Assembly (NCBI RefSeq): GCF_963853765.1 | Contig: NC_088855.1 | Coordinates: 45,198,001-45,262,000, forward strand | Direction of reading: 5' to 3' | Source of the DNA: Magallana gigas | Taxonomy: Eukaryota | DNA: 64,000 nucleotides | Shown here: positions 12,012-44,411 of the stretch, in pieces | Numbering within the stretch: position 1 is the first letter of the stretch | Layout of the letters: each line of letters starts with the position of its first letter | Made by a program: the position numbers and the translations under genes | Notes under the pieces: model-generated | Database searches by the model: none | What the model saw: only the letters and a program-made list of their open reading frames with translations | Told to the model about the DNA's origin: nothing

Positions 12012-15000
12012 ATGGCATCTGGAGGAAAACAAGACAGTAGACGACTAGAGGACTCTACAATGGAGGTAATATGAGTTTATTTTGTGAAACATAAATCTGT
12101 TTGAGTCCCAATTTATGAATCTCAGGCAGTGAAAGTTGACTCATCAGCTATTACTTTTATTTTTAATTTTAACTTAAATGATAAAAAAATAATATATATA
12201 TATCATCTTACAGACTGTTGAGAAGTTATTTGTTTCATATTTGTAGAGCCTGGCAGAAGTGTTCCGGTGCTTCATATGTATGGAGAAGTTGAGGGATGCT
12301 CGCTTGTGTCCACATTGTTCCAAACTCTGCTGTTTTCTATGTATTAGGGTAAAAAAATATCATTTTGCACATTAAATTCATTTTTCAATTTTGATTTACA
12401 TAAGTTATTAGTTTGGCTGATTAAAATTACTGTGTAGTCGGTAAGTCTCTCACGTGTTCCTATTTCCGTCACATTTGCTTATGGTCTGTTCCATGTAATG
12501 CCTAATGGTTTCCATAATTTTTTTCTTAATGAATACACGAACCAGGGAATAGGTTGATTACTTTTTAAAGTTATTGATTGAGTTACAATTACTTTGGATT
12601 TTTAAAGTAATTAATCACAAGCTTATTACATCAATTTTTAAAGGTAATCAATTGCATTGGATTACTTATCCTTCCTTTGATCATGATTGCTTTTGATAAC
12701 ATTATTTGTTTTTAGCTTTTCCTTAGTTGTTTTTTTTAATGTATAAAAAAGAATCTATGCATTTTGGTAGGACATTTAACAAATAGTTATGTGTATCTTT
12801 AATTTAAAAAAAAATCAATTTAACTGACAGAAACAGGAACATAGCACATTTAGACTCTTCAAGGTCTGTCTTTAAATTTTAGCTGGTCTGCTAAAAGGAT
12901 GAGAAGTTATTGAAATATAAAATTTCATTTTTACAGAGATGGCTAACTGAACAAAGATCACAATGTCCACACTGCAGGTAATATTGTAATGTGCATTATA
13001 AACAAACATAATTCTTTCAAATATTTTTGAAAGAGGGGTTAAGAACCCTTGAGTTATTGTTCTGTGTCTCATTATTACATAAACTTATTAAAGTATAAAA
13101 AAATACATTTTTCAAGAGAACAGACTTGCCAGGGTAGGACAAAGCAGGGCAGAAATCCTTTTGTATATAACTATCTATTAAAGTATGACTAAGTAAATTG
13201 TAATCTTTTTAAATTTTAAGTTCTGCAGTAACTACAAACTAGACATATAAAGTCTTTCAGTTTTCATGCATTACAGTAAGAATACATGATTAGTCAACTT
13301 TATGTTTAAAAAAAAAGAGGAGTTGCTAATAAAAATAGAAACAAAACACCTGCCTGTCTATTATATTTTAACATTTGGTCTCAAAAACTACATGTAGATA
13401 CTCATTTTTCTGTTTGGCCTTATGAATAAATGAATGTTTGATTCTTGTTTGATAGAGCATCTCTCCATATCCATGAGCTGGTGAACTGTCGCTGGGCAGA
13501 AGAGGTCACAAACCAGCTGGATACTTTAAAAGACTGTACCCCCACCCCAAAGAAAGAGGACTTGGATAAAGACAAGTATGTCAATAACACTGTCATAAAA
13601 TGTGGATGTGTTATACTGACTGTATATGTGTTGATAGTGATGCATGAAATATTAATAAGAATCAATTTATGACCCATCATTATTCATGTTGTGAAAAGTA
13701 ATTTAAAGTTCTAGATCTGCTTTAGTATAAGCTAGTTAGATTTTTTCTAAAAGAAACAAATTTAAGTAATTAATTGCATTCTGTTTCCCTTCAAATCACA
13801 CTTTGTCGTAGTGTGTAAGATTGTGATCATATGAAATTCATGGCTTGTTTAGCTTTTACACATGGTCAATTCATGGTAGTCTCCTTAGTTTCATTAATAA
13901 GACCTGTATTCATTTTCTTCATGCATGCCACCAGTGAGAAAGAGCAATTCTTTAGTGTTTGGATGTATGAAAGATTGCGTTATGGAAAATTGCTGCTGTG
14001 TATAAATATGTCAGCATTCATGCCATTTGTTTTTATTTTTATTCATGAATTGTAAATAAAACAGTCAGAGTATGGCATGAATTTTTCACCAGTACAAGAA
14101 AATTCAGATAGTTGAACCTCAGGTTAACTAGTCAACATACATAGATATAAGACTGGCCACAGATGAAGTGTATTACATTATTCACAAGAGAGATTAAGTG
14201 AGGCAGCCAAAATTTAATAGTACAATTAATGTACCAATGGTCATTGGATATGTTTTGTTCTGTAGGTGTGAGGACCACCAAGAGAAGCTGAGTGTGTACT
14301 GCTGGACCTGTAAACAGTGTATCTGTCACCAGTGTGCTCTATGGGGTGGGACAGTAAGTCACACCTTTGGGATATACTTACAAAAGCAAGAAATACAGAT
14401 ATATGTTCAATAGCTCTAGGTTGCCATAAGAGTGTAATGTACAACAGAGTTCTTGAAATCTTTTTTCCACTGTCAGTCATTTGGACTGACAACCATCAGA
14501 AGTTTGTCAGTCCAGACTGATTTCTATCAGTCCAAACATTTTCAATAGAAAGATGAAAAACTACAAGTATATTTGCCTTATAGTTTCTCTCATTTTTACC
14601 TTAATTATTCTGATTTCTCCTAACTTTCACATTCTGGCTCCTGATAACATTCTTATTTATCACTTCATTAATTATTTTTATTTCCTTCCCTCTCTCATTA
14701 TCAACTTTCTTCTTGTTCTCTTTCTCGTTCTCTTTCTGCACATTTCATATGTAACTAGGGCTCGGTTGTCAGATAGCGGAGTTCTTATTTCCCGAAAAAA
14801 ATTATAAATGATTACATTGGGATTTTTGTGCGTATTTCTGTGTATTGCAATAAAAAAATTCACTGAAAACCCTGTTTCGGTGTATGCAATGTACATTGAA
14901 AAAACGTAACGAGACAACACTCGCCATCTTGGATTTATAGGGGGCCCTCAGTTCACGCTATGTTTAAAACAAGTTCTCCAATTTCTCCCATGATTTCTGA

Positions 15001-42600: not shown

Positions 42601-44411
42601 AAATAGCAACTGCTGGATTGCTTGTCAAAAGGTGTCTCATATTCCTCTTCCTTTTACGGGGGAAACTGAGTGTAAGGATCTCTAAATACACAGGAAATCC
42701 CCCTTCAAAGTGGCATATCTCTGTACGCTCGTATAATTATGCACAAACAGACTCAGTTTTGTTTGTTTCAAAAACTGCAATGCAATATTTCATTTACAAT
42801 ATATGTATTAATAAAATGCTGATGATTTCAAATGTGACCTTTTCTGAGCTTTAATGTGCCCAAATTAGGAAACAATTTGATATACAAGTTGAATCCTCAG
42901 AAATAGCTCAATGATCAGTAAATGTTCAGTGAAAACAATTAACAAGGTAAATAGTAAAGCTGCTATTATCTTCTTCCTCACCCACCTAGCCCCACAACAG
43001 AATTTTTATATGTGGATACCTAGTGGAGAAAATGAAATGGGAAGTAAGGACAAATAAAATTTGAATTACAATTATTCAATTATACTTATACATCATAATT
43101 TGATAAGTTCAAAATCAATCAGTTAAATATCATAATTTGATAAGTTCAAAATCAATCAATGCAATTTAATGTGTGGTCCAAAGGATTCTCCATCTGACAG
43201 TTCTACACGAGAATGATCGTTACACCTATAGATTTCTGGAATTATTTAAAAGCTGGTCATGGAGTTATTCTAATATTTAATTCTTATTTTAATATCTCAT
43301 CAAACTTGCTCACAATTTGCAAAGACAACTGGTTCTCAAATCATTTGCAAAAGACAGGTTATTTGATCAATTTCATACATACTTATTCTAAAGAGAAGCC
43401 TTAATTTAAGCCTTAACTGCTACTGAGAAGACAACAACTTGGAGTGATAAAGAATACAGATATATATATGTTGAATCTGCAAATCAAAAGACCATGGGGA
43501 CATCCAAGCTATAACACACTGCACCCCACCCTGATAAACATAAAGAAGTATGACGCTATGTGCACGATTCTTTATGTAAAGTGTATTGACGGATATAGCA
43601 GAAAACAGAAGTGTACCTCGATAATCCCACTAGACTGGACCTATACTAAATCTATACATAAACTTTGACCATACTTTGTTTAAAACATGCAGTTGAATAA
43701 ATATTGTTATTTTTTTTTAATTATATTGTTATGGCATGTTCTTCTTCCTTGTTTGAGCCAAATCAACAAATATGTTCTAGGATATCATGTTAACACTCTA
43801 TTTGTAACAGGCAAGAATGTCACCCAATCTCACTAACATCAGAACATTGCATGGTCACCGCATATATAGGGCCTACACTACAAACAAAGGGAATTTATGT
43901 TTGGAGGTACTAATATGCACGGTTCCACTATTATACTTCAATGAAACACTGGATGAATTTTATTATGCTTGCAAATTAAAAGGACATTATTTTCATAGTT
44001 CTCATTCCAATAGCTTCTTATGCAAAAGGACCCTATGACGGATTGAATTTTTTATGAATATTGAGTGGAGTTGAAAATAAACTTATCAGTTCTGCAAGCT
44101 TAACTTCCTACTACAGACCGACTGTTACAAAAAACACCTGTGAAATGACAAGCTCTCCGGGTTACATCTATGCACTTGCACAAAACACAATTGGATCAAA
44201 CTCACTGTAATCCCAAGTAACGCAAACTCCAATCAAAACATTCCCCTTGTAATTCCTCTAGTGTTAAATGACGGTTGGGAGGTCTAAATGGTAAAAAGTC
44301 ACTATCGTCTTCATTGTCGTTGATGCGTTTACAAAATGCTGCCAGGAACCGCTGAAACGATTCTCTGTCATTCGTAAAGGGCTCCTCCATCTCGACTGCT
44401 ATGTTTGTCAT
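33683..44411 (-). CDS. PPM1E: PP2C-family phosphatase PPM1E/PPM1F (POPX/CaMKP) with a long C-terminal tail, about 847 aa
   Basis: Exons 44206-44411 (start could be 44432, 44411 or 44390), 39373-39530, 38718-38917 ([13 protein letters not shown]), 38201-38389 ([10 protein letters not shown]), 37373-37516 (KSGCTG...LAWLGDSQ...PHKPE), 37005-37098 (exon 6a: RIEALGG...[14 protein letters not shown]) or 36659-36755 (exon 6b), and 33683-35235 ([12 protein letters not shown]...STDNITV, then the tail). All phases are compatible. Confidence 0.93.
36659..36755 (-). CDS. PPM1E: Alternative duplicated PPM1E exon 6b (97 nt; [33 protein letters not shown])
   Basis: Acceptor atcttattttgacag and donor CTAG|gtaaat. 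No stop codon, same phases (0 to 1) as exon 6a, and clear protein homology to 6a. Confidence 0.85.
37718..38155 (-). mobile_element. Helentron/HINE-like remnant with two ~165-bp internal units, in PPM1E intron 4
   Basis: gtcatttaacaggaag and aacaaagagtgtgtt each occur twice at ~165-bp spacing. There is a short acggatagacagac microsatellite and a terminal ccc...ggg hairpin-like segment. Confidence 0.5.

What the first reader, a model, noticed from the sequence alone, without database searches (positions are those of the whole stretch)
12012..44411. TRIM37 and PPM1E are tail-to-tail neighbours, as at human 17q22
Seen: TRIM37 (+, stop 23852) and PPM1E (-, stop 33683) converge, with only one small intronless gene and transposons between them. 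Established: human TRIM37 and PPM1E are adjacent convergent genes at 17q22. Inference: a gene pair kept together since the bilaterian ancestor, implying shared 3' regulatory elements or functional coupling; the Cys-rich gene would be a lineage-specific intruder.
Basis: partly seen in the sequence, partly recalled or inferred. Interest (0 to 1): 0.7.

Follow-up and report, generated by a model that had tools for sequence, protein, structure and literature searches.

The report
Ancient TRIM37–PPM1E gene neighbours in oyster
In this oyster genome TRIM37 and PPM1E sit tail-to-tail about 10 kb apart, a neighbourhood inherited from before the cnidarian–bilaterian split and also kept in amphioxus, vertebrates and a sea anemone, but lost in many other animals and showing no sign of shared 3' control.

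Summary
TRIM37 (+ strand, ATG 12012, stop 23850-23852) and a PPM1E/F orthologue (- strand, ATG 44411, stop 33683-33685) converge, 9.8 kb from stop to stop. Between them lie one expressed, unspliced Cys-rich gene under strong selection (transcript about 27754-29912) and one MITE (30985-31323). An independent Saccostrea assembly is collinear, so this is not a misassembly.

The adjacency is ancestral. In amphioxus TRIM37 and the PP2C gene converge with one unrelated gene between them. In Nematostella the PPM1E/F orthologue lies 1.9 kb upstream of TRIM37, in tandem. A paper confirms the human order RAD51C-PPM1E-TRIM37.

It is not universal. Ten-kb flanks show no partner in a priapulid, a nemertean, a hemichordate, a crinoid, two limpets and a scallop. 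The limpet Patella and the scallop do keep RAD51C next to PPM1E.

The "shared 3' regulation or functional coupling" inference is unsupported:
- The oyster transcripts end at least 5.9 kb apart (more than 7 kb if TRIM37 uses its first poly(A) signal).
- Different intruder genes sit in the gap in three lineages.
- The orientation differs in the cnidarian.
- The non-coding conservation I found is shared only between oysters.

This is an ordinary conserved ancestral microsyntenic pair, a known kind. I found no paper that names it.

The parts
12012..23852 (+). TRIM37 orthologue, coding span of about 21 exons from ATG to stop
   Evidence: tblastn with Saccostrea TRIM37 P0219 and other named TRIM37 proteins. 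Met at 12012. Stop TAA at 23850-23852.
12247..12348 (+). TRIM37 RING-finger exon
   Evidence: 91-97% identical to residues about 19-52 of four full-length TRIM37 hits (two of them named). The collinear Saccostrea protein gives a weak zf-C3HC4_3 match at residues 25-68.
14264..14368 (+). TRIM37 B-box exon
   Evidence: Pfam zf-B_box, E 2.3e-07, above the curated cut-off.
16584..17615 (+). TRIM37 MATH-domain exons (16584-16718, about 17110-17193, 17316-17615)
   Evidence: Pfam MATH_2 partial matches. 673 representative proteins match at E<=1e-3, and the best named ones are all TRIM37.
23810..23852 (+). TRIM37 final mini-exon encoding the conserved ...DDxSVV C-terminus, with AATAAA overlapping the stop
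   Evidence: Translation and the C-termini of mollusc TRIM37 proteins.
25715..25962 (+). Block conserved between oysters. It may be the distal end of the TRIM37 3' UTR (inferred).
   Evidence: 74% identity to Saccostrea over 256 nt, although synonymous sites are saturated. AATAAA/ATTAAA signals at 25843 and 25891. No significant RNA fold.
27754..29912 (+). Intronless Cys-rich gene (CDS 27895-28578), an independent transcript
   Evidence: One 2,184-nt RNA contig is collinear without joints, depth reaches 457-872 in run X17, and the stranded reads fit a + strand RNA. The Saccostrea copy is intact: 86% amino-acid identity, 49 of 49 Cys kept, dN/dS 0.03. No Pfam, PDB or protein-database relatives.
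30635..30735 (.). Non-coding element of about 100 nt conserved between oysters
   Evidence: 83% identity to Saccostrea. No Rfam hit and no significant fold. Not found in more distant loci.
30985..31323 (.). MITE-like transposon, 339 bp with 43-nt terminal inverted repeats
   Evidence: Inverted repeat. Second copy at 5374-5696, 85% identical. Depth spikes and loose ends at both edges in all four RNA runs.
31817..33682 (-). PPM1E/F 3' UTR, about 1.9 kb
   Evidence: RNA contigs continuous with the coding exon reach down to 31817 (X17) and 32150 (X15). The stranded reads fit a - strand RNA. A minus-strand AATAAA sits at 31899. 33179-33400 is conserved in Saccostrea.
33683..44411 (-). PPM1E/F orthologue, coding span. 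Exons: 44411-44157, 39541-39359, 38918-38718, 38395-38201, 37516-37346, 37101-37000, 35257-33686, then the stop.
   Evidence: tblastn with Saccostrea, Mizuhopecten, Lottia and shark proteins. Pfam PP2C. Named hits are protein phosphatase 1E or 1F.
36657..36758 (-). Second copy of the 34-codon PP2C exon (paralogue of 37000-37101)
   Evidence: It aligns to the same residues 299-331 of P0004. Both copies are conserved in Saccostrea.
11398..11619 (-). First coding exon of a serine-racemase-like (PALP) gene, head-to-head with TRIM37 about 390 bp away
   Evidence: ORF translation. Saccostrea has a PALP gene in the same place. 11879-12071 is 87% conserved.
45364..46122 (-). HES/HLH-family gene upstream of PPM1E. 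It sits where RAD51C sits in Patella and Pecten.
   Evidence: A Saccostrea gene with a Pfam HLH domain aligns to this stretch at 69% DNA identity. The ORF itself gives no Pfam match.

Best explanation
This is an ancestral microsyntenic pair kept by descent. TRIM37 and the single invertebrate PPM1E/F gene were already neighbours in the cnidarian-bilaterian ancestor. They were most likely tail-to-tail in the bilaterian ancestor, as part of a RAD51C-PPM1E-TRIM37 block that is still intact at human 17q22.

Oysters keep the PPM1E-TRIM37 link. An oyster-specific Cys-rich gene and a MITE have been inserted in the gap, and HES genes sit where RAD51C sits in other molluscs.

The pair does not work as a 3'-coupled unit in the oyster. 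Each gene ends in its own 3' UTR, and a third, independently transcribed gene separates them.

What has held the pair together is not shown. My odds:
- About 45%: a loose cis-regulatory entanglement, with elements for one gene lying inside or beyond the other. This tolerates insertions and inversion but not separation.
- About 40%: slow neutral decay in conservative genomes.
- About 10%: 3' sharing or functional coupling.

Shown: the gene identities, the layout, the transcripts, and the neighbourhoods in ten other species. Inferred: the ancestral state and the cause of retention. The confidence given is for 'ancestral adjacency kept by descent, not a 3'-coupled unit'.
For: Gene models and orthology.

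Same layout in a second oyster genus: PALP, TRIM37, Cys-rich gene, PPM1E and HLH lie on one Saccostrea contig, 14.8 kb between the called gene ends.

Amphioxus: TRIM37 (+), a CARD/B-box/NHL gene (-), then a PP2C gene (-) 7.2 kb on. Its exons match PPM1E at the same exon boundaries.

Nematostella: a PP2C gene (+) ends 1.9 kb before TRIM37 (+). It carries the PPM1E/F-specific N-terminal exon (E 8e-10) and the exon just upstream of the catalytic domain (E 2e-18).

Vertebrates: the human order is RAD51C, PPM1E, TRIM37, SKA2 (PMC2360139 Table 3). ppm1e and trim37 are listed together in a catfish synteny figure (PMC4277396).

RAD51C lies head-to-head with PPM1E in Patella and Pecten. RAD51C is the best PDB match at E 7e-18 and 2e-16, against 2e-5 or worse (Patella) and 4e-11 or worse (Pecten) for other recombinases.

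The pair meets the published criterion for a conserved ancestral microsyntenic pair: at least 4 major lineages with at most 4 intervening genes (PMC3514665).

Chance adjacency is very unlikely. At roughly 4 slots in about 2,000 genes per chromosome per lineage, three independent lineages give about 1e-8 (my estimate).
Against: The pair is absent from 10-kb flanks in seven other sampled species. Any constraint is therefore weak or lineage-dependent.

The flanks are only 10 kb. 'Not adjacent' does not exclude linkage a few genes away.

Orthology of the amphioxus PP2C gene rests on three exons, because the rest lies outside the locus.

The convergent orientation in human was not tested here.

No expression correlation or chromatin data were available.
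Confidence: 0.8

Rival explanations
1. One reading: the pair is held tail-to-tail by selection on shared 3' regulatory elements, overlapping antisense 3' ends, or a functional link between the E3 ligase and the phosphatase.
For: The convergent layout is shared by oysters (window), amphioxus and, from my own knowledge, human, where the 3' ends abut. Several blocks in the gap are conserved between oyster genera although synonymous sites are saturated.
Against: The PPM1E RNA ends near 31817. The Cys-rich transcript fills 27754-29912 on the other strand. TRIM37 has poly(A) signals from 23851 to 25891. No overlap is possible without reading through another gene.

Different unrelated genes sit in the gap in oyster, amphioxus and Nematostella.

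The cnidarian pair is tandem.

In two ambulacrarians flotillin takes PPM1E's place at the TRIM37 3' end.

No intergenic sequence is shared beyond oysters.

I know of no published functional link between the two proteins, and two paper searches found none.
Confidence: 0.1
2. The adjacency arose independently in molluscs and chordates, so the resemblance to 17q22 is coincidence.
For: Seven sampled species lack the pair within 10 kb, including three other molluscs.
Against: Four distant lineages share the adjacency with at most one gene between (window). RAD51C-PPM1E, the next link of the human block, also survives in two molluscs. Chance adjacency of one named pair in three extra lineages is of the order of 1e-8 (my estimate).
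Confidence: 0.03
3. The junction is an assembly artefact of this scaffold.
For: None found.
Against: An independent Saccostrea assembly is collinear across the whole 8.8-46.4 kb span. Contigs of DNA runs from several studies hold 82-89% of the sampled words of 24001-34000. RNA contigs cover the Cys-rich gene and the PPM1E 3' UTR.
Confidence: 0.01

Closest known systems
Conserved ancestral microsyntenic pairs (CAMPs) of Irimia et al. 2012 (PMC3514665)
   Same: A non-paralogous gene pair adjacent in at least four major metazoan lineages with few or no intervening genes. It is inferred to be ancestral rather than convergent.
   Different: Most CAMPs are head-to-head, whereas this pair is tail-to-tail in bilaterians and tandem in a sea anemone. 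Neither gene is a classical developmental regulator. The pair is not named in that paper's main text, and its tables are not held here, so I cannot say whether it is already listed.
Human 17q22 block RAD51C-PPM1E-TRIM37-SKA2
   Same: PPM1E and TRIM37 are neighbours. RAD51C is the next gene on the PPM1E side in human, Patella and Pecten.
   Different: In oysters HES genes sit where RAD51C would be. A serine-racemase-like gene, not SKA2, is head-to-head with TRIM37. A Cys-rich gene sits in the gap. In the molluscs RAD51C is head-to-head with PPM1E, whereas in human (from my own knowledge) it is on the same strand.
Genomic regulatory blocks (target gene plus bystander genes)
   Same: The linkage survives inversion and insertion of other genes, as expected if regulatory elements of one gene lie in or beyond its neighbour.
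   Different: No developmental target gene is consistently present. No deeply conserved non-coding elements were found. The pair has broken up repeatedly without loss of either gene.
Convergent gene pairs with overlapping 3' ends (cis natural antisense pairs)
   Same: Tail-to-tail orientation.
   Different: The oyster transcripts do not overlap. At least 5.9 kb and a third expressed gene lie between the two 3' ends.

Membership tests
TRIM37 (E3 ubiquitin ligase, RING/B-box/coiled-coil/MATH) | N-terminal RING finger | tested here: met
   Exon 12247-12348 is 91-97% identical to the RING region of four full-length TRIM37 hits, two of them named. The exon alone gives no Pfam hit. The collinear Saccostrea protein gives a weak zf-C3HC4_3 match.
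TRIM37 (E3 ubiquitin ligase, RING/B-box/coiled-coil/MATH) | B-box zinc finger | tested here: met
   Pfam zf-B_box at 31.3 bits, above the 24.1-bit cut-off.
TRIM37 (E3 ubiquitin ligase, RING/B-box/coiled-coil/MATH) | C-terminal MATH (TRAF-like) domain, unique to TRIM37 among TRIM proteins | tested here: met
   MATH_2 matches on two exons fall below the cut-off because the domain is split across exons. The exon is 70-99% identical to named TRIM37 proteins, and the full Saccostrea orthologue scores 66.5 bits.
TRIM37 (E3 ubiquitin ligase, RING/B-box/coiled-coil/MATH) | Orthology shown by a tree built on the full-length protein | not tested
   All 120 listed hits of a full-length query (P0025, a Lingula-like TRIM37) carry the TRIM37 domain set, and every functional name among them is TRIM37.
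PPM1E/PPM1F (POPX / CaMK phosphatase) subfamily of PP2C | PP2C catalytic domain | tested here: met
   Pfam PP2C on three exons, 26.8-42 bits against a 20.3-bit cut-off.
PPM1E/PPM1F (POPX / CaMK phosphatase) subfamily of PP2C | Subfamily-specific N-terminal region ahead of the catalytic domain | tested here: met
   Exon 1 (44411-44157) aligns to residues 1-81 of proteins named phosphatase 1E in Saccostrea, Mizuhopecten and Lottia, and to the first exon of the Nematostella gene.
PPM1E/PPM1F (POPX / CaMK phosphatase) subfamily of PP2C | Placement with PPM1E rather than PPM1F | tested here: inconclusive
   Source names are mixed: 1E-like, 1F-like, and shark PPM1F at 55%. As one gene in invertebrates it is expected to be co-orthologous to both (inference). 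No tree with both vertebrate paralogues was built.
Conserved ancestral microsyntenic pair (Irimia et al. 2012) | Adjacent, with at most 4 intervening genes, in at least 4 major metazoan lineages | tested here: met
   Ostreid molluscs (window), a cephalochordate, a cnidarian and vertebrates (papers).
Conserved ancestral microsyntenic pair (Irimia et al. 2012) | The two genes are not paralogues | tested here: met
   The domain sets are unrelated.
3'-coupled convergent pair (overlapping or shared 3' elements) | Transcripts overlap or abut at their 3' ends | tested here: not met
   The PPM1E RNA ends near 31817 and the last TRIM37 poly(A) signal is at 25891. A + strand gene is transcribed at 27754-29912 between them.
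3'-coupled convergent pair (overlapping or shared 3' elements) | Orientation and an empty gap conserved wherever the pair exists | tested here: not met
   The pair is tandem in Nematostella. Intruder genes sit in the gap in oyster, amphioxus and Nematostella.
3'-coupled convergent pair (overlapping or shared 3' elements) | Correlated expression of the two genes | not testable with these tools
No expression atlas is on hand.

The most novel reading that the evidence does not exclude
RAD51C-PPM1E-TRIM37 is a three-gene block that selection has kept since before the cnidarian-bilaterian split, because regulatory elements of one gene are embedded in its neighbours. Oysters, scallops, limpets, amphioxus and vertebrates would each retain a different subset of one ancestral regulatory landscape.
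Probability: 0.2. Interest if true: 0.5.

Novelty: new member of a known kind. Interest (0 to 1): 0.3.

Why it matters
It adds a well-documented case to the roughly 600 known deeply conserved gene pairs, and it extends a piece of human 17q22 (RAD51C-PPM1E-TRIM37) back to the cnidarian-bilaterian ancestor.

The pair is tail-to-tail, which is the less common and less well explained class. It has been invaded by a different gene in each of three lineages. That makes it a usable natural experiment for asking whether such pairs are held by selection or are only slow to decay.

It has no direct bearing on TRIM37 or PPM1E function.

Tried and rejected
- Searching the 10-kb 3' flanks of PPM1E in Saccostrea, Pecten, Lottia and Patella for TRIM37 exons found nothing.
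- The 805-residue gene convergent with Patella PPM1E, and the 188-residue one in Lottia, looked like candidates. Their low-complexity C-termini are unlike the conserved mollusc TRIM37 ending.
- The first Nematostella look-up failed because only the longest isoform is on record.
- The Cys-rich protein has no relatives by database search, Pfam at E up to 10, or PDB. I also considered that it derives from a B-box, and found no support.
- The two oyster-level conserved blocks give no Rfam match and no significant fold.
- Paper searches for a published TRIM37-PPM1E microsynteny or antisense pair found none. The supplements of two key papers are not held. A 49-genome survey lists Saccoglossus PPM1E in a different block, next to TGFB1I1, and does not name TRIM37 in the part held.
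- PDB searches could not separate PPM1E/F from other PP2C proteins.
- Three reference slips that hit stop codons were corrected and resent.
- No human contig was fetched or compared. The N runs at 1741-1880 and 48454-48618 were left alone.
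Full report
**What is in the window**

The window is from an ostreid oyster. The best named relatives of its proteins are from Saccostrea cucullata. The sequencing runs that hold it are labelled as oyster or as one coded organism.

On the + strand, tblastn with named TRIM37 proteins lays about 21 exons from a Met at 12012 to a last large exon at 23255-23508. A 14-codon mini-exon at 23810-23852 supplies the conserved mollusc C-terminus and the TAA at 23850-23852, and an AATAAA overlaps that stop. Pfam finds the B-box and, split over exons, the MATH domain. The 100-residue MATH exon is 70-99% identical to proteins named TRIM37 in Nematostella, Priapulus, Octopus, Saccoglossus, amphioxus and fishes.

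On the - strand, seven exons from a Met at 44411 to a stop at 33683-33685 encode a PP2C phosphatase. Its N-terminal exon and catalytic exons match proteins named phosphatase 1E or 1F. One 34-codon exon is present twice.

**The gap**

The 9,830 nt between the stops are not empty.

- **Cys-rich gene.** One RNA contig of 2,184 nt is collinear with 27754-29912 without any joint. A second run covers the ORF at depth 457-872. Stranded poly(A) reads fit a + strand RNA. The ORF (27895-28578) is intact at the same place in Saccostrea, with 86% amino-acid identity, all 49 cysteines kept and dN/dS 0.03 while dS is saturated at 2.9. It has no relative in the protein database, Pfam or PDB, and none in any other locus I fetched. 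It is a real gene, restricted to oysters as far as I could test.
- **PPM1E 3' UTR.** Contigs continuous with the last coding exon reach down to 31817, near a minus-strand AATAAA at 31899.
- **MITE.** 30985-31323 is a 339-bp MITE with 43-nt inverted ends, a second copy at 5374-5696 and multi-copy read pile-ups. It is the only transposon I could verify in the gap.
- **Conserved non-coding blocks.** Against Saccostrea four stretches stand out: 25715-25962 (it holds two poly(A) signals and may be the distal TRIM37 UTR), 29434-29623, 30635-30735 and 33179-33400. None matches Rfam or folds better than shuffles.

**Not an artefact**

On one Saccostrea contig the order is PALP (-), TRIM37 (+, 897412-909730), the Cys-rich ORF, PPM1E (-, 924547-939168), HLH. 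blastn is collinear with the window from 8.8 to 46.4 kb.

**Survey of other animals**

| Species (group) | What the flanks show |
|---|---|
| Amphioxus | TRIM37 (+), a CARD/B-box/NHL gene (-), then a PP2C gene (-) 7.2 kb from TRIM37. Its exons match PPM1E at 54-74% with the same exon boundaries. |
| Nematostella | A 488-residue PP2C gene (+) ends 1.9 kb upstream of TRIM37 (+), with a 128-residue bZIP-like gene between. Its first exon matches the PPM1E/F-specific N-terminus (E 8e-10) and the next conserved exon matches at E 2e-18. |
| Tubulanus (nemertean) | No PP2C within 10 kb of TRIM37. Neighbours are TMEM120, tubulin and an ASCIZ-like gene. |
| Priapulus | No PP2C within 10 kb. Neighbours are UPF0561 and EBP. 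|
| Saccoglossus and Anneissia | No PP2C within 10 kb. Flotillin is the convergent neighbour of TRIM37 in both. |
| Pecten, Lottia, Patella | From the PPM1E side, no TRIM37 within 10 kb. The convergent neighbours in the two limpets have endings unlike TRIM37. |

A published 49-genome survey lists Saccoglossus PPM1E beside TGFB1I1 in another block.

Patella and Pecten do keep RAD51C head-to-head with PPM1E. RAD51C is also the neighbour of human PPM1E, where the published order is RAD51C, PPM1E, TRIM37, SKA2 (PMC2360139).

That human PPM1E and TRIM37 converge is my own knowledge of the reference annotation. It was not tested here, and no human sequence was fetched.

**Reading**

Adjacency with at most one gene between occurs in four distant lineages. 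This meets the published criterion for a conserved ancestral microsyntenic pair (PMC3514665). It is far beyond coincidence: roughly 1e-8 for three extra lineages, by my estimate.

Parsimony puts the pair side by side in the cnidarian-bilaterian ancestor. It puts the pair tail-to-tail in the bilaterian ancestor, flanked by RAD51C, with several later losses.

The further inference of shared 3' elements or functional coupling is not supported:
- The oyster transcripts cannot overlap without reading through a third gene.
- Three lineages carry three unrelated genes in the gap.
- The cnidarian orientation differs.
- Flotillin replaces PPM1E in two ambulacrarians.
- No intergenic sequence is shared beyond oysters.

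Tolerance of inversion and insertion fits two other explanations better: a loose regulatory entanglement, or slow neutral decay. I cannot separate these two here.

**Limits**

- Flanks of 10 kb cannot exclude linkage a few genes away.
- The amphioxus PP2C gene is only partly inside its locus.
I did not check it. If true, it shows that the rest of the human block has scattered along the chromosome while this link held.

Noticed in passing
L004:1-9001 (Patella) and L002:1-2593 (Pecten): RAD51C lies head-to-head with PPM1E in a limpet and a scallop. RAD51C is also the neighbour of PPM1E in human, so the ancestral block was probably RAD51C-PPM1E-TRIM37.
   Followed up: partly
L007:47574-52289 (Saccoglossus) and L008:38061-38116 (Anneissia): Flotillin is the convergent 3' neighbour of TRIM37 in both a hemichordate and a crinoid. 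This looks like a pair specific to ambulacrarians.
   Followed up: no
L003:1-5640 (Lottia): INTS2 lies just upstream of PPM1E. From my own knowledge, human INTS2 is at 17q23, a few Mb from PPM1E.
   Followed up: no
window 36657-36758 and 37000-37101: The 34-codon PP2C exon is duplicated. Both copies are conserved in Saccostrea (78-80% DNA identity), which fits mutually exclusive splicing. No splice reads were examined.
   Followed up: partly
window 11398-12083: A serine-racemase-like (PALP) gene sits head-to-head with TRIM37, about 390 bp between the start codons. The block 11879-12071 is 87% conserved in Saccostrea. This is probably an oyster-specific bidirectional promoter.
   Followed up: partly
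window 23810-23852: The TRIM37 proteins of most molluscs checked (7 of 9 sequences, bivalves, gastropods and an octopus) end in ...DDxSVV (variants ...ALV, ...SMV, ...SSSVV), encoded in the oyster on its own mini-exon. The ending looks like a PDZ-binding motif. It is absent in the amphioxus, hemichordate and Nematostella proteins listed.
   Followed up: no
window 45364-46122 and 50087-50761: Two nearly identical HES-like ORFs lie in opposite orientation around a masked stretch. In Saccostrea the copy nearest PPM1E is inverted relative to the window.
   Followed up: no
window 30635-30735: A non-coding element of about 100 nt is 83% identical between oyster genera despite saturated synonymous sites. 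It is weakly transcribed, apparently from the + strand, and has no Rfam match and no stable fold.
   Followed up: partly
window 5374-5696: A second copy of the gap's MITE (85% identity) lies inside a repeat-rich stretch at about 5.1-6.1 kb.
   Followed up: no
window 56115-58223: A + strand gene with a long acidic/basic ORF and a CCHC zinc-knuckle exon sits in a region of strong positive GC and AT skew. It was not identified.
   Followed up: no
L009:30589-33997 (amphioxus): The gene between TRIM37 and PPM1E in amphioxus has CARD, B-box and NHL matches. It is unrelated to the oyster Cys-rich gene.
   Followed up: no
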